Positions 34,709 to 53,750 are shown, numbered from the stretch's first letter. The stretch is DNA of 64,000 nt from Rhodosorus marinus CCMP1338 (GCA_029953675.1 JAMWBK010000001.1:372001-436000), one strand, 5' to 3'. Notes: generated from the sequence alone by a model not told the origin. A program made the numbers and translations.

Positions 34709-36886
34709 TCAAGTCTTCTGCGCCTCCAAGGCATGAAGCTCTTCCAAGGTTGCCGTAGTATGCTTTTCGTCCAGTGGAGCTATTTCCATTTCCACGCCAT
34801 CCGCATCAAGCGGCAATACTGGGTAGTTGGCTGAGAAACATCCGAAACAGTATGTCGCGGCTTCTGCACCCAAAAAGTCCTGTCCGGCAAGCCCACGTGC
34901 CAATTTGCTCAGAAACCCGGTAAGGAAACGCGCTCCCGTTGCATCGAGGGGATAGAGTCGGGCATGTATTTGAGCTTCTGATGACTAACCTGCAAACGGT
35001 TAAGTGGCAAATAGGCCAAGCTGTCCGCTCCGATGTAGTCGCGTGTCTCTTCAACAGTCTGTTTAAAGGATATTAGTTCACCCCTGTCGGGTGTATCGAC
35101 TCCGTAGTAGCAGGAACCAATAATAGGTGGACAGGCAATCCGCACGTGGATCTGTGACAAGTAGAAATTTCAGACGAGCCCTGCGCGTGAGGCAAACACC
35201 CGATTGACAAGCTAAAGCTGCCTTCCAGACTCTGTAGGAATATCTCTTACCTCTCGTGCACCACATTCACGAAGCATCCTCACGATTTTCCGACTTGTTG
35301 TTCCTCGCACGATGGAGTCATCCACGACTACTAAACTCTTCCCTTCTATTAGCTCTCGGACTGGTGACAGCTTCAACTTGACACCAATGTCGCGGATCGA
35401 TTGGGTGGGCTGTATAAACGTACGCCCTGGAAAAGAGCACACGGGAGTTGGGGTTTATGCCACGCCTGAAATTCTTTTCAGGAGATACATAGAAGAGGAT
35501 CACCCAAACCTACCAACATAACTGCTCCTCATAATCGCCATCTGGAATGGTATCCCAGAAGCCTGCGCATAACCTAGAGCTGAGGGTATTCCCGATTCTG
35601 GAACTGGAACAACAATGTCAGCGTCAACCTGTCATAATCCCAGGAATGGTTAGTACGCTCACAAGCACTTCCAAACGCGTTCCATTTTTGATCGCTTACC
35701 TGGCTAACACCTGCCAAGATTTCACCAAAGCGATAGCGGCTCATATACACACTCCTGCCGAAAACAGCGGAGGAGGGTCTGGAAAAATAAATGTGTTCAA
35801 AAACACACGCTCGACGTCGCTGGCGCGGAAAGGGACTGCTGCTCTGTGTTCCGTCGGAATTAACTACGACCATTTCACCCGGCTCTACCTCACGCACATA
35901 CTCAGCGCCGATAATATCGAAAGCGCTGGTCTCGGAAGCAAAAACTACGCCGGTGCCCAGGCGGCCCATTACGAGGGGTCGGAAGCCGAATGGATCTCGA
36001 ACCGCAACGAGCCGATCTTTCACGAGCACAAGAATAGAAAAGGCCCCCTCCACTCGGTTCAATGCATCCGCGACTCGCCTTTGGAGTCCGAACGCCTGTG
36101 ATGACCGACTAGCATGCACAGATCCTGCCATGAGGTGCAGCACGACTTCTGTATCCGAAGACGTTGTGAAGATCGATCCTCGAAGCTCTAACTCGCTTCG
36201 TAGGACCGCTGCGTTGGTTAGGTTGCCGTTGTGTGCAATCGACACCTATTGCAACGAAAGTAGCCTCAGCACACTTCTCTTCATTAAGGAAACCGCGACC
36301 AAGCTTAGGAATGCATATCTGTTTTTGGATGCGCACCTGTCCCTCTCTGAAGTCCACAGTGAACGGCTGAACGTTCTTGACATTTTTTCCACCGGCAGTC
36401 GAGTACCTACTCATACACATTTGTTTAAAGGATTACGAAGAGTGGCAAATCGCGTCAGGACGGCGGCCCAAGTTGCTTTCGGCCTCCCGTCACGAAGGAA
36501 GACGAGTACCTATTATGTGCAATAGCGCTTGAGCCAGGCAAAGACTGCAGGAGATTCTCATTGAACACCTCTGACACCAGTCCAAGCCCCTTTTCTTCCT
36601 TTAAATACTCCCCATCCGAAGCCACGATACCCGCTCCTTCTTGTCCTCGATGCTGAAGAGCATGAATCCCATAGTAACAAGCTCGCGCGGCGTCTGGCAC
36701 TCCCCATGCACCGAAGACTCCGCACTCTTCCTTCAATTTATCATCATCTGGGTTCACAACCTCCGTTTCCAGCCTCGTTGGTCCGTTGTCGTCTCCAGCT
36801 GAACAAGACACGCGGGCTCTACCGCAGGTCGACGTCCTAATCCTAGACCCGTTGGGACCTAGAACGACTAAAAATCCTAATGTCAT
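34709..36886 (-). CDS. purF: Amidophosphoribosyltransferase, plastid-targeted, multi-exon
   Basis: [73 protein letters not shown]...CYYGVDTP. Confidence 0.97.
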
Positions 36887-41668: not shown

Positions 41669-42551
41669 TCAAGAGCGTCCTTCTAGATCCGCACCGCGGA
41701 CCACACTTTCGAATACCTTTTTCGTTTCCTTATACACAGATTCGATATCCAAGTTTCCATCAACCACAGACAGCTTTCCTTTGCGTGAAAAATAGTCGAG
41801 CAAGGGTCGTCCTGTATCAGCAAAGTTTTTCAGTCTCCTGTCGATTACGGTTTTTTCGTCATCTACCCGGTCAGATGTCGCAGAGCGCTGCAATAGCCTT
41901 TCCCGTAATACCTAAGTCAATATCATAACTCGAAGGATCAGTGCGAGCACTTCAACTGTGGAGTGGGAATCAAGCAAAGCCCATTCTCCCGATGCCAAAC
42001 AAGTACCTCGCTGTTCACATCGAAGTAGAGAGCGTGATGGAACTGCCCAATAGCCTTCTCGTACTCCTCCATTTGCTCTAGATTCCGCGGAAATCCATCA
42101 AGCAGAACCCCTTCAAGTCCCGGCGGAACTACACGTTCCAGTTCCTTCCTCAAGATCTGTATCGCAAGGCTTCCGGGTACAATGGTCCCTTGGTCGATCA
42201 TCGTTTTGATCGTGACACCCAGACTTGAACTGCCCTGAGCTTCCGATCGAAGTAATTCTCCCATCGTCATTTGGCGGAAACCGGAATCTGTAGCAATACG
42301 CTGACATTGCGTCCCCTTCCCGCACCCAGGACCGCCAATCACGAAGATCACTTTTGGGATCTAAGAGCAATACGCACAAGAGTCATCAGAGACAAACAAT
42401 GACTCATACACTGACAAGGAGGAATCCACGAGAAGCCACGTCTCAATGACGCTTGTGTACCAACCTGAATCAAACACTTTGAAAGTCCCCGACCACGACA
42501 CCTAGATGCGCGACCCGACACGATCTCAATCCCTTTCGCGATGAACGCCAT
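41669..42551 (-). CDS. Adenylate kinase / UMP-CMP kinase family, probable plastid transit peptide, 3 exons
   Basis: MAFI... N-terminus; IFVIGGPGCGKGTQC, GELLR, LLDGFPRN, RVDD...IDRRLKNF. Confidence 0.92.
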
Positions 42552-42740: not shown

Positions 42741-43395
42741 TCAGAGATACGAGAAAAGCAAGGTGCTGGTCAATATCAACCGATTATCGCTTTGATGGAC
42801 TGTTCCTTTCGCACGTCCAAACCGTCCATTTAGACGGAGAGTTTCGACCACCACACGAACCTCGAGCGTGGGATCCTCATTGAACTCTGCCGCAGGGTCA
42901 GTCCAAGTAATCTTGTCCATGCCAGCGAGAACAACGATCTTGCCAGATGAAGCGTTGATCTTCATACGGAATAGGAAAAAAAGGTGAGTCAGTTTGCTGC
43001 GAGGCACGTAGAAAGGACTCCCGTCCCCTTCGCACCTGGTTCGCGAGGATCACGCTCGCCTGGCCCATGGCCTCGAGAATCTCGAACTTCGTGTGCTTCC
43101 TCGGGAATGTCGACGCCACCAAGCTGGCACGTCTCCCTTCAACCACATTCTCTTTTGCGCAGTCGATTAGCAAAGCCGGAGGCCGATGCGGAACGAGTTC
43201 GAGGATCTGATTATGACTGAGACTGGTCCCCACTGATCCCGGTTTCTTGGTGCGCGAAACCGTACTAGACGGCGATGAGCTATGGCTGAAGCGAAGGAGC
43301 CGGTAGATCGGCTGCCACCCATTGCTTTCTGCGCAAAACCTCCTGACAGCATATTCTTTTCCCATTGCTTTCTGCGCAAAACCTCCTGACAGCAT
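42741..43395 (-). CDS. FabZ-like hotdog-fold (3-hydroxyacyl-ACP dehydratase-like) protein, 2 exons, divergent active site
   Basis: LSHNQILELVPHRPPALLID, ILEAMGQASVIL, LAGMDKITW, and C-terminal GRAKGTV...LLFSYL match the FabZ layout. Confidence 0.75.
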
Positions 43396-43403
43396 ATTCT
43401 TTT
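43318..43403 (+). repeat. Exact 43-bp tandem duplication spanning the start codon of the FabZ-like gene
   Basis: CCCATTGCTTTCTGCGCAAAACCTCCTGACAGCATATTCTTTT at 43318-43360 and 43361-43403. Confidence 0.95.
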
Positions 43404-44213
43404 CCTCAGACTGTAGGTAAAAGCATTCGACCTCAACTAATGCAACGTCACGATCGCTCCCAGAGGGTTAGAAGACGATCCTAGTTCCTGCAGCCCCCCC
43501 TTGATCCACACAATCGAACTGCCACGATTAGAATCCCATGCTAAAGGCTTCCGGTATGGGATCCGAGAAATCCAATAGGTTCATGTTGAGCAACACCTCA
43601 TCCATGTTTGAAAAGAGAACCCTAATCTTCAGGCTTTGCGAAAGCAGAAGCTCACTTGAGAACCTTGGTGGACAGTTGCTCATTTCTGCCACGTGGTCCC
43701 ATGTTTCTTCTGACTTGTACTAAGCCAAACAACTTAAAGAGTGACGTTTGGTAGTAGCGATACGAGACTTTCTGTCAGTGCACTGCCCACCTAGGGAATG
43801 TGAATTTGTACTGGTCAGAGTTGTGGTTTTTTGTAATTGGATAAACTTTGTTTCAATTGAATGTTTATTTTTCTTTTTTTTCCCGTTCGCGTCCAGTATT
43901 TGTACTCTTAAGTTCAATCCGGAGCTCATGTATGGAGATGAAAATAGGTTGAGATTTACAAAAGACATCAACGGAGCTTGGCCTGCATCCTCGTGGAACG
44001 AAAAGCTCCACACGATTCCATGCCATGGTAAGGAATATGTAGTCGCAGATTCCAAAATCCCACTAGTCCTCCTAGCCTCGACATTGTCCGCGGTCCAGAT
44101 GTGCATACAAGGAGCCTCTAGAAGGCATTCTGCTCCTGTTCTGCTATTTTCAAAGAGACAAGACCACAAGGCTTGGTTAAGTGGAGGTCGAGGAAACGTG
44201 TTAAGATTAACAA

Positions 44214-44435
44214 TCAAACAGATCGGATACAAAGCCTACCGTTATTCCGCTTCGCAGCTGCCTCCTCCTGCTTCGCCATTTGTATACTCACACGCAGCTC
44301 CTGAGCTACCTTCTTGACATCCTGCAGGGACTTCCTCGCTCGTACTCCAGCGGCCTTGTTGTTCTTGTTAAAAAACTTATCGGAGTCCTTGGAGATAGCT
44401 TCCACCAGGTCTTTCAACTGCTGAACCTTATCCAT
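44214..44435 (-). CDS. Histone H1-like protein of the Hc1 (chlamydial HctA / Bacteroidetes / NCLDV) family; probable intron 44172-44239 and further exon(s)
   Basis: MDKVQQLKDLVEAISKDSDKFFNKNNKAAGVRARKSLQDVKKVAQELRVSIQ carries the Hc1 signature NKAAGxRxRK in a helical hairpin. Confidence 0.82.
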   Translation of the reverse strand: MDKVQQLKDLVEAISKDSDKFFNKNNKAAGVRARKSLQDVKKVAQELRVSIQMAKQEEAAAKRNNGRLCIRSV

Positions 44436-45953
44436 CTTACACTTCTCAAATCTGCTTAAAACCTTCGGACTGGGGCTGGGGCGGGGTCAATTCGTAGCTG
44501 TCCAACTTCAACCGAAAACTTTTTCAACTAACTTATCCTGCACGTAGTGCTTCGCTGTAGTGTCGCACAGGAGACTTCATCGTCATTAGCCTCTTTCAAG
44601 CCTATTTCAACCCTTTCAGCAGCAGCCCGAAAACCGCTCTCCAAAAACAGGTACGAAAAGATAATCGTTGACGAAAAAGCCAATTTCCGGCAACCAGTCA
44701 CCCCCCCCAATGGGTTAATTTTGGCCTCGAAAATGGCTCCATTTTGGGGGGTGCTTAAAACCCCCTTTTTTCTAGCCCCCAATTCCAGCTGGTTAACGCA
44801 TCCCCCGAAAACGATACCATTTTCAACGATTCGCTTCTATGGCAACAAAAAAAAGGGTATTTCACAACCCCCCCTAACACGCGTTCCTAGCTTGGAATCG
44901 AGGGATTCTAAAACCCCCCCCCCTTCCTGAAACCAGGACAATTCAAGATTACCAATTGCAATCGGCGCGTATGGATTTTTGAAACTCGTGCGACTGAAGG
45001 AACCCCCTAGGTGACCCAGGCTAAACGGGACATGCATATTAATCCCCTTGCCGGCTTCAAATCAAATTTCTCGTTTCATGAATATACATAGTTTAAGAAC
45101 GCATTAAGGGGTTTCTACGGAAGAGCTTCTCCCCCCTTAAACAAACGATGTAATAGTTTTCTTCAGAATCGATGAATTCTGCAAAGCCGGATAGTGCCCC
45201 AATTTCGAGCCCTATGTCTTACCCCGCAGTTTCGGTTTTCTGCTGCTTCCTCAACCCCTCCGAAGAGCAGATTTTTAGTAGATTCCCTCCAAAACCAGAA
45301 AAAGGCAGACCCCTCCGGCAAAACGTGCTTCCTCCCCACAAGATTTCAAATTAGTACTCTAATAACAAATAGCAGGGTTCTCAAAACAATCTTACCCTCC
45401 CCTGCGGAAACCTGCAAAAATCCGTTCGTGATATTTTTCTTCTCACGAAGGAAAACAAGAAAAGGGCACTACCAGTGCTGATAGAGTGGCCCTGTAGGGG
45501 TGCTCAGAGCGACATGATCATGTACTCGCTTTTTATTCGTCTATTGCTCACAAGTCGCCAGCAACCTGAAGTAAAGTTTTCTATTTTCAGGTATCTGGAA
45601 CTTAATATCTTCCTCGCTTTCCAAGCCAGTTTTTATGACAGTCTGTCCAATGAAGTCGTAAATTAATGACTGGAAAATCTTAAAATGATTGAACTGTAGC
45701 AACGGTGGATTGGGTTGGCATTGGATGGTCGGTTCTGAGCGTTGGAAAAATGGATTTTTCGATCCGATTCAAGTAGGAATTCTGAGCTATCGGAGATACA
45801 ACCTAAACGTATATGAGCTCATGTATAATCTTTTTACAACTACTAATGAACTTCCCTGTTCCAAAAACCGAGCATAAAGAGGGGGGTTCGAGGGCAACTA
45901 CAATCACGTTTTCGCGAATGGCTTTCATGCGATCCGAAGTATGGGACTCGATG

Positions 45954-45989
45954 CTTTAGCTCAAAGCTGTAGACAGCTTTGAGCTAAAG
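45954..45989. repeat. Perfect 17-bp palindrome with 2-nt centre
   Basis: CTTTAGCTCAAAGCTGT-AG-ACAGCTTTGAGCTAAAG. Confidence 0.95.
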
Positions 45990-46323
45990 ACGATAGGTAC
46001 AATCCACTCAAGAACGACGTTCCCATCTCAAGACTTCAAGTTTCCCTTGTACCTCCATTGTACTTCTCCACTACCACTACTGGGGGACTGGGAATTTACA
46101 AAGTTTACCTGTCGCAAGTCGACGATTGGAAGCACTAGCCTCGTTTTGCTTACAGCGTAGATTGCCGGTGCGTTCCCGTTGAGGCTCTTCAGGGCAGTAC
46201 AATCGCCTAACTACAATGAGCCATGAACTGATCCCATCCACATACTAATATGCCCGTCCCATCGTCGTCCATTCCTCCCAAGAAAAGCAGGAATTCTGGG
46301 TTTCTGAAATCAGCTGTGCGGTT

Positions 46324-46865
46324 TCAACGGACGAACTTTGCATCATCGAAGGACGCCACGAGTATCATCGCGACTGTAGGTATATAGTCTTCGCCTCTGT
46401 CAGCATCTCTCGGTTCCTCCTCTCCATCTTCATACTCCTGTTGCTTCTCGCCAGGACTCCGCAGTTCTACTTCTTTCACGGCAGCTTTCTTTTTGCTTTT
46501 CTGGGAGAAATAGCGCATCAAAGCGTTCGAAAATCCACTCTGTTGCTTCATGATCTTTTTGTGTCTTCCGGCGAGGTTGAGATTAGAATGGCAGGGCAAT
46601 GCTAAACGTTGACTTCTGTATTTGTTTCTCCAACGTATGCACATCATTGTGTATTTATTCAGCAGCCTAGCTACCCTCGATATCGAAGATATCAGCTGTT
46701 GGGCTTTTGTGACGCCTCGTGATTACCGATTGCTTTAGTGCATGAATGAGCTCTACAGACGATTGCGGGATGTTTGAGAACTGCCACCACCATCCGTACC
46801 CCCGTGGCTTCTACCTACTGGCACACCAAAACACCATCCGAGTCTTCGGGCCGTCTAATGATGTC
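46324..46865 (-). CDS. Possible multi-exon hypothetical protein (structure unresolved, may be degenerate)
   Basis: 107-aa ORF with K/E-rich segments, plus upstream ATG and splice-like signals. Downstream frames are interrupted by stops. Confidence 0.25.
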
Positions 46866-47421
46866 CATCTTGTCGGCCTGTGAATCCCTGTTTCTTGTTC
46901 TGTTTTTTGGAAAACTTATATTCAGGATTGATGATTGATTCTATTTTTGGTTTGCAACATTGAAAGCCGGGCATATCTTAGGTTGTTCGAGATTAGGAGT
47001 AAGGTCTCTCTCCACAAGGCGAGATGCCTTGCCTCGGTTCAATGCGTAGTCACAGATACATGTCCACAGACATACATAAGTTGTTCAGGGTTTCTGTAGT
47101 GCCCGTATTTTAACTAGCGTACCCTGGAAGAATGCGATACAGCAATGGAACATTGTGTTCTTCTCGAGTTCGTCCTTGTACATCCTTCAAGCCCGAAGCC
47201 AGGGCTATCGATGTTCTTGACTCCTCATCGTCCATCATCCCCAGGAATTGAAAAGACTGAGTTGTATATATGTCACTCAGGATGGACGGAATACTGAGAA
47301 GAACCATATCTCCGGAAGGTTCTCAGCGACAGGTCTGGATCTGGAAGTTCCTCGAGTCGCGGCAGAAGGCGTGTTACTCCATTAAGGATGCAAAAGATGT
47401 TCTGATTATGCACAGTCATTT

Positions 47422-49684
47422 ATGGCTAAGCTGGTGCTGCAGAATTTCCTGCTGATCCTGGTCGCGTGTGTGATCGGGAGGGTGGCTCAGTGGTTCTCCT
47501 CGCTTGATGCCCAGGTTCTGTCCATAGCTCAAGTAGCCCATCTTCATGGGGACGAGTCGCTCGGTGGCTTTGTGCTCCTTAACGACAGGTATGGAGATGC
47601 ATTTCCTCGTCTCGGGGAAAACATGAAGGCGACTCACTGAACAAACTATTTGCCTTGCCTTTGTCAAAGCGAGTATGTCATCTGTGAAAAGGATTCGATC
47701 GTGTACATAGGACCAAACGGAGAGCGGCGTGAGACTAGTCTAGTCCGAAAGGGTCATCATGGCTCATCAGGACGAGTTGCGATCGCCGTCGATGCAAATC
47801 GTCTGCACAGCACGCTACGGTATACCCTTGAACCGGACTTTCGATTTATCGCAGCGTCAGACTGCTAACATCTGCATGTTCTCATGTTGTAGGATGGCTA
47901 TCTTAACAGATGGATGGCGGCTCATCCTTTTCAAAGATCAATTGACGACGGTTTGGGAAGCGGACGTGCTTGGAGATGAGATTGACAAGGCTCAGATTAA
48001 TCCGCCTTCGGAGTCTTCTGTACTATAGAAACTCAAAGCTGCTGTGAAGTGATATACAACCTGACAAGGACGTCTCCGCTTGCACTAGGTTCTAATCATG
48101 GAGTCGTCAGTGATCATCGTTGGAGCTGTTTCTCTGGAAGGCAGGGTAAGCACTACTTGCGCCCTGGCGCTTTGACGGAACTCCCGAAAAAAGCCCTTTT
48201 TCCTGAATAGTTTCTTTTGATCGTTTTTCTCGGCACAGGAGACTGCAACCTACGCCTCTTTCTCACTACTGGATGGCAACCTCCAGTGGCGTAGGAGAGA
48301 ATCAAAACTTGATTTCGAGTCAATCTATAAGGAACGTGAAAAGGCTGAGAACCAAGACTTGATATGGCGTGTTTCGGATGACCACCATATTGCGCCGAAC
48401 GTAAACCTCTACTGTTGACCAAATAGAGCCTCCTGGCAGGGTTTTGAACGAGCTGACATAAGATCCCAACCGAATACTTTCCGTACGAACTAGGCCTATC
48501 GAGAACAAGCGTTACGCTCTCTACCTCACTTGTGGATTGACCCTTGGGACACGAAGCTCATCCCAACCAAGTTCAACGTCGAGCTCGGTGAGTCGAAGCC
48601 TTGGCTGCTGTTGTGGAGAACCCTTCAGCAGGAAGTCACTCGCTGATAAGCATGGCCAACGTTTTATCCTTTCGCACAGAAAGCAGGAATACGAACGATG
48701 TGATCGTTTTTCACTGGTCCAGGGGAGTCGAGATCTTTCATCCAGAAACTGGAACACCTGTTACGGAGCTGTTGCTTGAGCCAAACATGGGACATGCTGA
48801 CTACACTTTGGACGGTAGTATTGAGTCCTTGGCTGTAGCTGAAGACGAGAAGAAAAGGTAATAGATGAAACCAGTGCGAACTTGGGAATACATACCTTCC
48901 GGTTGTAACCACCCCTTTTGTATTTTGTCCGACTAAACAAACTGCGAATGGGCTCTTCTAGCTGCACAGTTGCACTTGGGACCAGGGTTTCCCTGGTTTA
49001 CAAGAAGTCCTTGTGCCACCGAAGCGAGGGCTATGAGTCCACGGTAGCTCTGGTTTATCCAGTCGTGTCTGCTACTCAGGACACAGACTTGTTGCCAAGG
49101 AAAAGAGCGATTTTGATATTTGATAACATCGTGTACTGTATAGATACAATATCGGGGCGGTTGATCTGGAAGAACGAGCTTCCCGTCGAAGTAGGAAGTC
49201 GCTCCAATTTCCAGGAGGTGAGGCCTAAAACAGCGTCAGAACGCATGGAAAATCTCAAAAGCACGCTCAGCTGCTCAACGTTCTCAATTGCTTTAATTCG
49301 CTCGACTGACAAAAGAAGCATCGGTATCGGACGATCTTTGTCGAGCCACTCAAGGACGCGAGTGGTAGCATCTACAGGATTGCTTTGGTTGGAGGTGGAG
49401 AGGTTGACTTCATAGACGCTGGTTCCGGCCGAACAGTCCTTTTCACATCGTTATCGTTCAGCGCGTCAACTCCACCCATTGCGATTGACGTGGACGGCGA
49501 CGGGGTGGAAGATGGAGTACTTGTGCGAAGCGGTGCCTTCTTGTACAAGGTTTCCTGCTCATCTCGAAGTAATAATGCCACGCTGACGGTCGCAGAATTC
49601 TGTACCTCAGCATGCATCATAGTCGCAGCGATCATATGCGTCATGCTTACGCGGGCGAAGAAATCAGCGCCGAAGAACGAATGA
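47422..49684 (+). CDS. FG-GAP/beta-propeller type I membrane protein resembling the Arabidopsis NERD1 family (multi-exon)
   Basis: N-terminal signal anchor; segments MAILTDGWRLILFKDQLTTVWE, NVIVFHWSRGVEIFHPETG..., GHADYTLDG, IAIDVDGDGVEDGVLV; C-terminal TM ACIIVAAIICVML. Confidence 0.6.
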
Positions 49685-49844: not shown

Positions 49845-51092
49845 TCACTGGCTAGCTTCGTCTGCAGACTTTTCGGACGAACTGCCCCGTCTACCCTGTT
49901 CCCAATCCCAAGTGTTTTCGGGTTTGAGGTACCGTTGTTCACGCTTCGGGGGTTCCTGAGGCGGGGGCATAAACCTGAGTTCCCTATTCCTCAGTCGTCC
50001 GCTTCTGGCCCTGTTGACGCATCTTCGCAATTCGTCAAGCCTCTCCTGTACATGCTTCTCATCCATTCTCCCTTGCCGCTCCAAGGCTCCCCGGAGCATC
50101 TCCACAGCCTCTTTCGTACTCGCTGCAGGCAGCATGGTAGTTTCGTTCTCTAGGTAGGTCATCAAATTTTCGAAGTCCTCTAGTTTCCCTTGCTTAGCGT
50201 ACGCACGGAACATGGTATTGAAGATCATAATGTCCGCTGAGTACTTGATTTTTTTGAAAAGCATGTCCGCAGCCTGCATAAGGTCGGCTTCGACAAATAC
50301 TTGAATCATAGCATGGTCGAGTTGCTTTGGGAAGCGGTTTTTGTACCGTCTCTCGGCAATCTGGTACACTTCAGTGGCTTTCTTCACCTCCCCCATCTGC
50401 CCGTATGCGATGATAGCCTGGAGATCTGAAACTCGATCAGTTTTCCGCCCCTCAGCATTGTAAACCTCATACATTATTGCTGCTCCTTTGTAGTCCTCGC
50501 ACCTTACATGGGCCCTCATGTAAGCGCCGAACGTTTGTACCTCTGGCTTAACTCTTCGCGCTAGCATCTCGTTCCATAGCTTTCTTGCCAGCTTCATCCG
50601 CTGGCTCTCGCCCGCGGAATTGATCAATGCCGTGTATGTAACATCGTCCAATTTCCTCAACTCCTTATCCAATTCCTCTTTGATAAGCAGACACTCCTTC
50701 ACCCTGCCATTTTTCCCCAATGCGAACAGCGCCTCGTTGTACACAGACAACGGAACATCCCTGTTCCTCGCACGCATGTGATCAATCACGGATCTCACTC
50801 GATCAACTTGATCGCCCCTCGCTAGTGAACGAATCCAGTGTCCATAACACTGATCAAGCGGCTCTCTTCCATGCCCTTCCACCTCGAGCATGGTGTACGC
50901 AACTCGTCGAAAATCCCCATAACTTGCAAGCCCTTCTGTAACACGAGCGACCTCAATATCCCTTCCTATATACCCTTTCTTCAAGCGACTATTAAACACA
51001 TTGAACGCTTGCAGTATTGATTTCTTCGTGCGCTCGAAGGGTCGTAACCCAGACGACCTCTCCCAACCTTTTACAAGTTCACGCGAAGACAT
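49845..51092 (-). CDS. P-class pentatricopeptide repeat protein (probable upstream exon near 51162-51362)
   Basis: 35-aa repeats VYNEALFALGKNGRVKE, VTYTALINSAGESQRMKLA, QTFGAYMRAHVRCEDY, MIFNTMFRAYAKQGK. Confidence 0.9.
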   Translation of the reverse strand: MSSRELVKGWERSSGLRPFERTKKSILQAFNVFNSRLKKGYIGRDIEVARVTEGLASYGDFRRVAYTMLEVEGHGREPLDQCYGHWIRSLARGDQVDRVRSVIDHMRARNRDVPLSVYNEALFALGKNGRVKECLLIKEELDKELRKLDDVTYTALINSAGESQRMKLARKLWNEMLARRVKPEVQTFGAYMRAHVRCEDYKGAAIMYEVYNAEGRKTDRVSDLQAIIAYGQMGEVKKATEVYQIAERRYKNRFPKQLDHAMIQVFVEADLMQAADMLFKKIKYSADIMIFNTMFRAYAKQGKLEDFENLMTYLENETTMLPAASTKEAVEMLRGALERQGRMDEKHVQERLDELRRCVNRARSGRLRNRELRFMPPPQEPPKREQRYLKPENTWDWEQGRRGSSSEKSADEASQ

Positions 51093-52469: not shown

Positions 52470-53750
52470 TCATGGTTTGTTTGAGTTAGTATCCATCACG
52501 AGGGCCTGCCTTTCTTTAGAATTTCCTGGCCTGGCACCTTCCATTTCTTCTACGAAACGCGTTCTCCTTTCCACATCGAGTTGCCTCTTTGACAAAAGCT
52601 TGTCCATATCTGCAAACAGTGGCTTATCCTCAAAGGACATAAGACCTCTGTGCTCGATAAGCTGGCACAGTTCTTTCGCTGCCTGCAGGGACTCAACTGA
52701 CCAACTTCCAACGTAGCGAGCAATCATCAGACGAATAGCGTTCTGATAATGCTCAGGTACCGGAAGGCATTCCAACAAGACCCTCTTCAGAGACCAAACA
52801 CACACACTCTGCCCCACTTTCAAATCTGCAACATTCCACGCTGCAGTCATGATCGAGATTGTGATTCCCAGTTCAAAGCGCTTCTGTTCAGCAAGGAACC
52901 GTAGAAGAAACTCACGAAACAGCGGTCGTTCTCTGGCGTGGTTAAAACAGCGAAAAATTGCCGCAAAATACACCGGCGTTGGTGCTATAGATAGCTCTGC
53001 CCTCTTCGAATCCAGTAGAAGAGCAAGTCTAATGTCCCTCAGCTCGCCAATTACCGCGGGAAAGTGGTGAATACCTATCTCATCGCTGGAAGCTTTTCTC
53101 AGTATGTCCTCCGCCGCTTCCACAGCCCTCCCACTATGAGCGTAGGCCGCGTAAAGATGTCTCTGGTAGTCTGGATACGTGGAATTCCTACCGACGAGCA
53201 CCTCCAGGTGCTCCTTCATGACTTCGGGGCTACAAATTCTCGATAACTCCATGAAATACGAGTCGAGGTGTTTGTTGTAAACGCTTAAGCTGCTGCTCCT
53301 CCCGCGCGCTCTCCTCAGCAGGGAGAGCGCTTCGTTGTACCTCCGTCTCCGTACGTCAGCGATCGAGAGGAGAACCAAATTTTCCACGTCCAATTTGTCA
53401 AATGTAGCCTCCAAAGCCGTCTCCAAGAACGCTGCAGCCTCAGTTTCGCCCTCTGAATTGGCCATCCCCAAAACGTTTTGAACACTCGCTGCAATAGTCG
53501 AGGGCGATGAAGTTCCCTCAAGTTGTCTTCGTAGATCCTCCGTCGCTTTGGAAAGACTAGAAGACGTCCTCTGTCTCCTCTCACCCCAAGTATCCAGAAA
53601 AGAAAGCAGGCTTCGTTGTACCCCATCAAACTCGCCCTTCTGAACCACCTCACCGCTCAACGGGTTGACCCAGCACTTATGCACACCTTCAGCGTCTACA
53701 AAAACATGCCGAATGAGTGCCGATCCCAAAAGTCTCCCCCTAGACCCCAT
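52470..53750 (-). CDS. Divergent helical-repeat (PPR-like) protein
   Basis: 426-aa ORF of paired amphipathic helices with degenerate PPR-like units (LYAAYAHSGRAVEAAE, VYFAAIFRCF, ISIMTAAWNVADLK). Confidence 0.6.
   Translation of the reverse strand: MGSRGRLLGSALIRHVFVDAEGVHKCWVNPLSGEVVQKGEFDGVQRSLLSFLDTWGERRQRTSSSLSKATEDLRRQLEGTSSPSTIAASVQNVLGMANSEGETEAAAFLETALEATFDKLDVENLVLLSIADVRRRRYNEALSLLRRARGRSSSLSVYNKHLDSYFMELSRICSPEVMKEHLEVLVGRNSTYPDYQRHLYAAYAHSGRAVEAAEDILRKASSDEIGIHHFPAVIGELRDIRLALLLDSKRAELSIAPTPVYFAAIFRCFNHARERPLFREFLLRFLAEQKRFELGITISIMTAAWNVADLKVGQSVCVWSLKRVLLECLPVPEHYQNAIRLMIARYVGSWSVESLQAAKELCQLIEHRGLMSFEDKPLFADMDKLLSKRQLDVERRTRFVEEMEGARPGNSKERQALVMDTNSNKP

What the first reader, a model, noticed from the sequence alone, without database searches (positions are those of the whole stretch)
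44214..44435. Bacterial/viral-type Hc1 histone-H1-like gene in an algal nuclear genome
Seen: a 66-73 aa basic helical protein with NKAAGVRARK, no transit peptide, and a plausible spliceosomal intron (GTAGGC...CTTAAC.AAG, 44172-44239). Established: the Hc1 family includes Chlamydia HctA, which condenses the elementary-body nucleoid, plus short homologs in Bacteroidetes and large DNA viruses; it is not the canonical eukaryotic winged-helix H1. Inference: a horizontally acquired chromatin-compacting protein, domesticated (intron gained), which may act as a linker-histone substitute or condensation factor in this alga.
Basis: partly seen in the sequence, partly recalled or inferred. Interest (0 to 1): 0.7.

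Follow-up and report, generated by a model that had tools for sequence, protein, structure and literature searches.

The report
Red-algal Hc1-core helical-hairpin gene
This is a real, expressed, spliced nuclear gene of the red alga Rhodosorus for a 73-residue protein related to bacterial "Hc1/histone H1-like" proteins; the gene is old and shared by all red-algal classes sampled and by cryptophyte nucleomorphs, and it lacks the basic tail that makes chlamydial Hc1 condense DNA.

Summary
The ORF is real. Joining exon 1 (44435..44240) to exon 2 (44143..44118) across a 96-nt GT-AG intron gives 73 aa, identical at 73/73 positions to a Rhodosorus marinus transcriptome peptide.

PF07432 (Hc1) membership is confirmed. 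The protein is not an HctA ortholog (18 bits against a 100-bit cut-off). It matches only the N-terminal core of Hc1, not the Lys-rich DNA-binding tail.

The gene is not a private acquisition of this alga. Named orthologs exist in five red-algal classes: Cyanidiophyceae, Stylonematophyceae, Compsopogonophyceae, Bangiophyceae and Florideophyceae. They also exist in cryptophyte nucleomorphs (Chroomonas CMESO_300, Cryptomonas paramecium). The nearest non-eukaryotic relatives are 57-62-aa proteins of Bacteroidota and Balneolales (50-62% identity) and many viral contigs. Composition and codon use are host-like.

The best reading is one ancient bacterium- or phage-to-red-alga transfer followed by vertical descent. 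The product is predicted to be a helical hairpin with an invariant Arg/Gln/Lys ladder on helix 2, probably a small dimeric nucleic-acid-binding protein.

The "linker-histone substitute or condenser" reading is not supported. The core carries only +2 to +5 net charge, several orthologs are net acidic, and C. merolae has a separate H1. Interest is moderate.

The parts
44240..44435 (-). Exon 1 coding part (ATG at 44435..44433; codons 1-65 plus the first base of codon 66)
   Evidence: ORF list and sequence. Joined to exon 2, it reproduces transcriptome peptide P0001 at 73/73 positions.
44265..44435 (-). Region encoding the conserved Hc1 (PF07432) core, residues 1-57: helix 1, the N-x-A-A-G turn, and helix 2 with the R34-Q38-K41-Q45-R48-Q52-K55 ladder
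   Evidence: HctA model aligns residues 2-55. PF07432 is precomputed on the identical peptide. AlphaFold2 pLDDT 94.9 with helices 3-24 and 27-73. Column conservation over 478 domains.
44144..44239 (-). Spliceosomal intron, 96 nt, GTAGGC...AATAG, phase 1, GC 0.41
   Evidence: Removing it gives a product identical to the transcript-derived peptide. Intron GC is below exon GC.
44176..44181 (-). CTTAAC, candidate branch site 33 nt upstream of the true acceptor
   Evidence: Read directly from the sequence. The assignment is an inference from its position.
44118..44143 (-). Exon 2 coding part (last two bases of codon 66, codons 67-73, stop TAG at 44120..44118)
   Evidence: Encodes (A)EQEQNAF, the C-terminus of P0001 and P0002.
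44214..44435 (-).

Best explanation
The locus is a bona fide two-exon nuclear gene of Rhodosorus (Stylonematophyceae). It encodes a 73-aa member of the PF07432 'Hc1' family that consists only of the family's conserved core plus a short neutral tail.

Origin (inferred): the gene entered the red-algal stem lineage once, from an FCB-group-like bacterium or one of its viruses. This happened before the crown red algae diverged and before the secondary endosymbiosis that produced cryptophyte plastids. It has been inherited vertically since, acquired host codon usage and, in Rhodosorus, a 3'-proximal intron, and was kept even in the roughly 500-gene nucleomorph.

Mechanism:
- Shown by prediction and alignment: the protein folds as an antiparallel two-helix hairpin. 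Each helix has a heptad-like hydrophobic stripe. One face of helix 2 carries a near-invariant ladder, R34-Q38-K41-Q45-R48-Q52-K55, preceded by R32 and K35.
- Inferred: two hairpins pair through the hydrophobic stripes into a four-helix bundle, as the N-terminal domain of chlamydial Hc1 is reported to dimerise. The Arg/Gln/Lys ladders contact the phosphate backbone or groove of DNA, or possibly RNA.
- Inferred: with no presequence and a mass of 8 kDa, it acts in the nucleus or cytosol (nucleomorph or periplastidial space in cryptophytes). It would be a low-charge architectural or regulatory nucleic-acid-binding protein, not a polycationic H1-like condenser.
For: - Gene model: 73/73 identity of the spliced product to transcriptome peptide P0001.
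- Family: every listed hit of 5449 carries PF07432; 989 representatives in the exhaustive search; HctA model aligned in register over residues 2-55.
- Red-lineage distribution: Pyropia and Porphyra; Agarophyton; Gracilariopsis and Cyanidium; Madagascaria; Cyanidioschyzon and Cyanidiococcus.
- Nucleomorphs: Chroomonas CMESO_300 and Cryptomonas paramecium. The Hc1-bPH_2-RPL6 order, with NOG1 adjacent, is conserved on 18-26% GC nucleomorph contigs.
- Nearest prokaryotes are Sphingobacteriales, Cytophagales, Chitinophagales and Balneolales at 50-62% identity, with no chlamydiae in the top 80.
- At least 421 IMG/VR contigs carry a relative.
- The 11 named eukaryotic sequences are monophyletic against the 74 nearest genome-derived bacterial and viral sequences, with 76% bootstrap.
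- Host-like GC, GC3 and codon adaptiveness.
- Flanking eukaryotic AK/UMP-CMPK and PPR genes.
- Structure: pLDDT 94.9 hairpin.
- Conservation: R32, R34 and R48 at 100%; K41 100% basic; Q38 and Q45 at 97-98%; hydrophobic heptads on both helices.
- N-terminal domain of Hc1 assigned to dimerisation (PMC2848022).
Against: - No experiment on any core-only member was found, so both nucleic-acid binding and dimerisation are inferred.
- The only biochemical assignment for this domain, in Hc1, is dimerisation and not DNA binding.
- The core is only mildly basic and some orthologs are acidic overall. That fits weak or regulated binding, or a non-nucleic-acid ligand.
- The tree rests on 58 columns. When unlabelled metagenome proteins are added, short bacterial-looking sequences fall inside the eukaryotic clade.
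- Absence from non-red eukaryotes was inferred from labelled hits of word-index-limited searches, not from a complete survey.
- Foldseek finds only generic hairpins.
Confidence: 0.6

Rival explanations
1. One reading: a horizontally acquired chromatin-compacting protein that acts in this alga as a linker-histone substitute or condensation factor, in the manner of chlamydial Hc1.
For: - The gene is a PF07432 member, and databases auto-name relatives 'histone H1'.
- The conserved Arg/Lys ladder could bind DNA.
- Nucleomorph copies are strongly basic: core +9 to +12, and the Chroomonas tail +13.
- Nucleomorphs lack a recognisable linker histone (PMC4822330).
Against: - The Lys-rich C-terminal tail that binds DNA in Hc1 is absent. 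The Rhodosorus tail is 16 aa and about neutral, and the whole protein has net +4.
- Orthologs in Pyropia, Porphyra, Madagascaria, Agarophyton and Cyanidium have pI 5.5-6.7.
- The HctA equivalog score is 18 bits against a cut-off of 100.
- C. merolae has a separate H1 (CMN183C) in its histone cluster, and red algae are reported to have H1 or H15-domain proteins.
- The C. merolae, Cyanidium, Gracilariopsis and Agarophyton copies are not next to histone genes.
Confidence: 0.12
2. Same gene and same history, but the conserved ladder binds RNA, ribosomes or another polyanion (for example polyphosphate or a phosphorylated metabolite). The protein would then be a translational or stress regulator rather than a DNA-architectural protein.
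For: - Hc1 and Hc2 are reported to bind RNA as well as DNA and to repress translation (titles and text cited).
- The low net charge fits a specific ligand better than bulk DNA coating.
- Nucleomorph genomes mostly retain expression and translation housekeeping genes, and the gene sits beside RPL6 and NOG1 there.
- Weak, sub-threshold similarity of a bacterial member to PhoU.
- MEcDP releases Hc1 from DNA in Chlamydia (PMC11192765).
Against: There is no direct evidence. The PhoU hit is at E=0.015, far below its cut-off. Gene neighbourhood in nucleomorphs carries little functional meaning. Fold hits to ribosomal hairpins are at E>3.
Confidence: 0.2
3. The gene is older than the red algae. It would have been inherited from the Archaeplastida ancestor, the cyanobacterial endosymbiont or a chlamydial partner, and lost elsewhere, rather than coming from an FCB-type donor into the red stem.
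For: - The family's founding member is chlamydial, and chlamydial gene contributions to Archaeplastida have been proposed (review text).
- A 58-column domain cannot resolve the donor.
Against: - No green-plant or glaucophyte hit appeared among labelled hits.
- The top 80 of at least 557 GTDB matches are all Bacteroidota, Balneolales or Rhodothermales, with no cyanobacteria or chlamydiae.
- The algal proteins are as far from the HctA model as the Bacteroidota proteins are.
Confidence: 0.1
4. The locus is a bacterial contaminant or an assembly chimera.
For: The nearest non-eukaryotic relatives are bacterial, at up to 62% identity.
Against: - A GT-AG intron is confirmed by a transcriptome peptide.
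- Composition and codon use are host-like.
- The flanking genes are eukaryotic and contain introns.
- The best matches are red-algal, not bacterial.
- Orthologs lie on chromosome-scale red-algal contigs.
Confidence: 0.01

Closest known systems
Red-algal and cryptophyte-nucleomorph PF07432 proteins already in public databases: C. merolae BAM81398.1 (UniRef name 'Histone H1'), Cyanidium CDCA11G3306, Gracilariopsis BWQ96_06815, Pyropia KAK1858494.1, Porphyra OSX71723.1, Chroomonas nucleomorph CMESO_300 (AFP65470.1), Cryptomonas paramecium UXY86892.1 ('histone H1')
   Same: Orthologous core at 57-68% identity over 58 columns. The core starts at or near residue 1 with no presequence; some florideophyte copies have short or Q/P-rich N-terminal extensions. 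They carry the eukaryote-typical residues D2, K16 and N25 and are nuclear or nucleomorph encoded.
   Different: The tails differ: short and neutral here, acidic or Q/G-rich in Bangiophyceae and Florideophyceae, long and N/K-rich in nucleomorphs. The 3' intron was seen only here.
Small 'histone H1' proteins (57-62 aa) of Bacteroidota and Balneolales, and their counterparts on viral contigs
   Same: They are essentially the same single domain, 50-62% identical, with the same invariant K20-F21, N26, A29-G30, R32, R34, Q38, K41, Q45 and R48, and a similarly modest charge (median core +2).
   Different: They are prokaryotic or viral and intron-less, with almost no tail. No function has been tested for them either, and no paper was found.
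Chlamydia trachomatis Hc1 (HctA)
   Same: Its conserved N-terminal domain is homologous to the whole algal core (model positions 5-58 of 121).
   Different: Hc1 has a Lys-rich C-terminal tail that binds and condenses DNA, which is absent here. The algal protein scores 18 bits against a 100-bit equivalog cut-off. The developmental and sRNA control of hctA has no counterpart that could be tested.
Canonical eukaryotic linker histone H1 (winged-helix GH1/H15 domain plus a Lys-rich tail)
   Same: Only the database nickname, and a possible chromatin context.
   Different: There is no winged helix and no Lys-rich tail. The predicted fold is a two-helix hairpin, and no H1 structure was matched by sequence or by fold.

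Membership tests
PF07432 (Hc1 domain family) | Significant match to the family profile over the conserved core | tested here: met
   PF07432.19 is precomputed on P0001, which equals the spliced window protein. Profile searches return 5449 proteins, and all those listed carry PF07432. The exhaustive search finds 989 representatives at E<=1e-3.
PF07432 (Hc1 domain family) | Signature residues K-F at the end of helix 1, N-x-x-A-G at the turn, R-x-R-K, then Q, K, Q and R at i+4/i+3 spacing | tested here: met
   The window residues K20, F21, N26, A29, G30, R32, R34, K35, Q38, K41, Q45 and R48 are shared by 93-100% of 478 aligned domains.
PF07432 (Hc1 domain family) | Known three-dimensional fold of the family | not testable with these tools
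   No solved structure was found by sequence or by fold. Only the AlphaFold2 hairpin is available.
HctA (chlamydial Hc1, NCBIfam NF051889 equivalog) | Whole-protein score at or above the curated cut-off (100 bits) | tested here: not met
   18.1 bits, E=0.0032. C. merolae scores 18.5 bits and Bacteroidota members 15-26 bits.
HctA (chlamydial Hc1, NCBIfam NF051889 equivalog) | Lys-rich, acid-free C-terminal nucleic-acid-binding tail | tested here: not met
   The match covers only profile positions 5-58 of 121. The C-terminal 16 residues carry net charge 0 to +1 and include Glu. The feature definition comes from PMC2848022.
HctA (chlamydial Hc1, NCBIfam NF051889 equivalog) | Condenses DNA / nucleoid | not testable with these tools
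   There is no experimental handle here. The composition argues against bulk charge neutralisation.
Canonical linker histone H1 (PF00538) | Winged-helix globular domain | tested here: not met
   The prediction is a two-helix hairpin. No H1 chain was matched by sequence or by fold.
Canonical linker histone H1 (PF00538) | Long Lys/Ala/Pro-rich C-terminal tail | tested here: not met
   The protein is 73 aa in total, with K11, R4, D5 and E6.
Recent, lineage-private horizontal transfer | Restricted to one species or genus; atypical composition; no introns | tested here: not met
   The gene is present in five red-algal classes and in nucleomorphs. GC and codon use are host-like. It contains an intron.
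Ancient bacterium/virus-to-red-alga transfer | Eukaryotic copies monophyletic and confined to one eukaryotic lineage, within an otherwise prokaryotic/viral family | tested here: inconclusive
   The eukaryotic copies are monophyletic at 76% bootstrap against labelled bacterial and viral sequences, but the clade is not clean once unlabelled metagenome proteins are added. Only red-lineage organisms appear among the eukaryotic hits that carry an organism name, but the survey is not exhaustive.

The most novel reading that the evidence does not exclude
The Hc1-core protein is a red-lineage-specific chromatin component. It would be important enough to survive nucleomorph genome reduction, and in nucleomorphs it would serve as the missing linker-histone-like compaction factor. 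Nucleomorphs encode no recognisable linker histone, and there the protein has become strongly basic. Its DNA binding might also respond to a plastid MEP-pathway metabolite, as reported for chlamydial Hc1, which would tie plastid metabolic state to nuclear or nucleomorph chromatin.
Probability: 0.08. Interest if true: 0.8.

Novelty: new member of a known kind. Interest (0 to 1): 0.4.

Why it matters
The family assignment is ordinary, and orthologs already sit in public databases under automatic names.

What seems unreported is the distribution (no paper found). A family otherwise known from bacteria and viruses is fixed across the whole red lineage and is retained in cryptophyte nucleomorph genomes, where a dedicated study found no linker histone. 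That makes it a clean candidate for a very old prokaryote-to-eukaryote transfer that became indispensable. It is also a candidate for an unrecognised conserved nucleomorph protein.

The result also warns against reading the database label 'histone H1' as a function. The conserved part is the domain assigned to dimerisation in Hc1, not its DNA-condensing tail.

Tried and rejected
2. Exact-sequence look-up of the unspliced ORF in public contigs: not on record.
3. PHROGs and PADLOC: no hits.
4. PDB by sequence and by fold: nothing significant.
5. tRNA and Rfam scans of the window: nothing.
6. Histone-cluster linkage: the C. merolae copy is on chromosome 14 but lies among TPT, SHMT and PIP5K genes, not histones. 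The Cyanidium, Gracilariopsis and Agarophyton copies are also not near histones.
7. TPT-Hc1 microsynteny between C. merolae and Agarophyton: the two TPT genes are only 21% identical and the window has no match, so it is coincidence.
8. Full NJ tree including all unlabelled metagenome proteins: no clean eukaryotic clade, because the alignment has too few columns.
It was redone with A5.
10. By-eye FabZ/hotdog guess for ORF 42898..43395: no PDB support.
11. Pedersen 1996 primary paper: not held, so the domain assignment is cited second-hand from PMC2848022.
12. Repeats around the gene: none.
13. Cultured-phage collection: only one hit, an uncultured 462-kb phage.

Full report
**Observation.** The minus-strand ORF 44214..44435 exists and encodes 73 aa containing NKAAGVRARK.

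- The annotated protein search returned two near-identical transcriptome peptides. P0001 comes from Rhodosorus marinus MMETSP0315, and P0002 from an unidentified MMETSP1475 organism at 86% identity. Both carry PF07432.
- P0001 departs from the unspliced ORF after ...AAAKRNN and ends with AEQEQNAF, which is encoded 96 nt further downstream.
- Joining 44435..44240 to 44143..44118 as they stand gives an in-frame 222-nt CDS. Its 73-aa product equals P0001 at 73/73 positions. P0001 carries one extra terminal K where the window has TAG.
- The intron is therefore 44239..44144: GTAGGC...AATAG, 96 nt, GC 0.41. Its acceptor at 44172 is wrong and reads into junk.
- An in-frame stop lies 18 codons upstream of the ATG with no intervening ATG. 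Residue 1 aligns with residue 1 of the bacterial homologs, so exon 1 leaves no room for a transit peptide.

**Genomic setting.**
- Window GC is even, at 0.45-0.51.
- The neighbours are eukaryotic. One is an AK1/UMP-CMP-kinase-type ORF whose match stops at residue 118, as expected at an intron. There are two PPR genes and PurF pieces in different frames.
- The CDS has GC 0.505 and GC3 0.66. Its codon adaptiveness, measured against pooled neighbouring ORFs, is 0.85, compared with 0.78-0.80 for the neighbours themselves.
- There is one copy in the window.
- Contamination or chimerism is effectively excluded.

**Family.**
- NCBIfam gives only a weak, in-register hit to the HctA equivalog: 18.1 bits, E=0.003, residues 2-55 on profile positions 5-58 of 121, against a cut-off of 100.
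- The exhaustive HMMER search found 989 cluster representatives at E<=1e-3 and 74 at E<=1e-10.
- A 51-sequence profile found 5449 proteins, and all those listed are PF07432.
- The protein is therefore a member of the Hc1 domain family but not an HctA ortholog. Bacteroidota 'histone H1' proteins score the same 15-26 bits on the HctA model.

**Distribution.** The best hits are eukaryotic.
- Named red-algal members: Pyropia yezoensis and Porphyra umbilicalis; Agarophyton chilense; Gracilariopsis chorda and Cyanidium caldarium; Madagascaria erythrocladioides; Cyanidioschyzon merolae and Cyanidiococcus. With Rhodosorus, that makes five red-algal classes.
- A second group has N-rich tails and lies on 18-26% GC contigs packed with eukaryotic housekeeping genes and Tic110.
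- Named members of that group are CMESO_300 on a 232.7-kb nucleomorph chromosome of Chroomonas mesostigmatica, and a Cryptomonas paramecium protein annotated 'histone H1'.
- The local order Hc1-bPH_2-RPL6, with NOG1 adjacent, is shared between Chroomonas and the metagenomic contigs.
- The gene was therefore already in the red alga that became the cryptophyte endosymbiont, and it has survived extreme genome reduction.
- Outside eukaryotes, at least 557 GTDB species genomes carry a relative. The top 80 are all Sphingobacteriales, Cytophagales, Chitinophagales, Balneolales or Rhodothermales at 44-62% identity (most at 50-62%), with no chlamydiae or cyanobacteria among them.
- At least 421 IMG/VR contigs carry one, many of 100-430 kb.
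- One uncultured 462-kb phage in GenBank has one. BFVD gives a probable Klosneuvirus relative.
- A 2025 paper notes PF07432 in 'moraphage' jumbo phages.

**Origin.**
- On the 58-column core, the 11 named eukaryotic sequences average 59% identity to each other, 48% to the nearest bacteria and 46% to the nearest viral sequences.
- They form one NJ clade against those 74 labelled sequences in 76% of 300 bootstraps. The nucleomorph trio groups in 90%.
- Adding all unlabelled metagenome proteins blurs the clade, so the tree is suggestive only.
- The domain is single-exon in Gracilariopsis, Cyanidium, a florideophyte-type contig and the nucleomorph, so the Rhodosorus intron is lineage-specific.
- The most economical reading is one ancient transfer from an FCB-type bacterium or its virus into the red-algal stem, followed by vertical descent. 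An older origin with losses is not excluded.

**Structure and mechanism.**
- AlphaFold2 with a 53-sequence alignment gives a two-helix hairpin at pLDDT 94.9, with helices 3-24 and 27-73.
- Foldseek finds only generic hairpins: designed homo-oligomers and the PRC1 and ING4 dimerisation domains, all at E>=2.
- Across 478 domains, both helices carry heptad-like hydrophobic stripes.
- Helix 2 carries a one-sided ladder, R34-Q38-K41-Q45-R48-Q52-K55, preceded by R32 and K35. It is conserved at 97-100% for R34 to Q52 and at 86% for K55.
- I infer a dimeric four-helix bundle that presents two Arg/Gln/Lys ladders to a polyanion, most likely DNA and possibly RNA.

**Why the 'condenser' reading fails.**
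- In chlamydial Hc1 the conserved N-terminus is assigned to dimerisation and the Lys-rich C-terminus to DNA binding (PMC2848022).
- The algal protein has only the former.
- Core net charge is +2 to +5 in red algae, with a bacterial median of +2.
- The Rhodosorus tail is about neutral.
- Full-length proteins of Pyropia, Porphyra, Madagascaria, Agarophyton and Cyanidium have pI 5.5-6.7.
- C. merolae has a separate H1 gene (CMN183C) in its histone cluster, and red algae are reported to have H1 or H15-domain proteins.
- The C. merolae Hc1-type gene lies elsewhere on chromosome 14.
- Only the nucleomorph copies are strongly basic. Nucleomorphs were reported to lack linker-histone genes (PMC4822330). 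That leaves a small chance of a histone-like role there.

**Novelty.** I found no paper that links PF07432 or Hc1 to red algae or nucleomorphs. The orthologs are nevertheless already in databases, some auto-named 'Histone H1'. The gene is a new member of a known family. The phyletic pattern is the interesting part.

**Limits.**
- No functional data exist for any core-only member.
- Absence from other eukaryotes rests on labelled hits of capped searches.
- The phylogeny uses 58 columns.
- The primary Hc1 domain papers could not be read.

Noticed in passing
L162-L164 (ENA marine metagenome contigs) and L171 (Chroomonas mesostigmatica nucleomorph CP003681.1:121590-137985): Cryptophyte nucleomorph contigs (GC 18-26%) carry the Hc1-type gene in a conserved block, Hc1-bPH_2-RPL6 with NOG1 adjacent. 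In the metagenomic lineage Tic110, importin-beta and TAF6 lie upstream. A published survey reported no linker-histone genes in nucleomorphs.
   Followed up: partly
window 41938-42351 (-): An ORF with a strong match to eukaryotic AK1/UMP-CMP kinases (E=9e-24). The match ends at residue 118 of about 194, so the rest of the gene probably lies beyond an intron.
   Followed up: partly
window 49845-51092 (-) and 52470-53750 (-): Two adjacent same-strand ORFs of 415 and 426 aa. The first is a clear pentatricopeptide-repeat protein (E=2e-39 to designed and plant PPRs). The second looked PPR-like by eye only.
   Followed up: partly
window 35574-36886 (-): Two ORFs in different frames that look like pieces of amidophosphoribosyltransferase (PurF), implying an intron. 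This was judged by eye from the translations and not searched.
   Followed up: no
window 42898-43395 (-): A 165-aa ORF directly downstream of the Hc1-type gene. It has a hotdog/FabZ-like motif by eye, but no PDB sequence match at E<=1e-3.
   Followed up: partly
window 44680-44930: The stretch upstream of the gene is rich in C and G homopolymer runs (C8-C10, G6). No direct or inverted repeats were found in 43400-49000. About 4 kb upstream of the gene has no ORF of 110 aa or more.
   Followed up: partly
window 44118-44120 versus P0001: The transcriptome peptide P0001 ends ...NAFK, whereas the window has a TAG stop straight after ...NAF. This could be a strain difference or a peptide-calling artefact.
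   Followed up: no
P0159, P0160, P0027 (metagenome proteins): Some family members contain two tandem Hc1 cores. P0027 also has a signal-peptide-like N-terminus. P0160 (300 aa) also carries a PF05596 label.
   Followed up: no
P0193 (Bacteroidota member); P0289: A weak, sub-threshold similarity of a bacterial core-only member to PhoU (TIGR02135, E=0.015). JGI names one member 'phosphate uptake regulator'. This may be a distant helical-bundle relationship or noise.
   Followed up: no
L166 (Gracilariopsis chorda NBIV01000125.1:92843-93659): The annotated 96-aa model adds a 32-aa N-terminal extension from two small upstream exons. The conserved domain starts at an internal Met that aligns with residue 1 elsewhere, and 64-aa versions exist (P0272, P0273). 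The extension may be an annotation artefact.
   Followed up: partly
BFVD A0A1V0SJN2 (Klosneuvirus KNV1); GenBank LR756500.1:253604-253768: A giant-virus protein (31% identity over 51 columns, Foldseek probability 1.0) and an unannotated 462-kb uncultured phage both appear to carry the domain.
   Followed up: no
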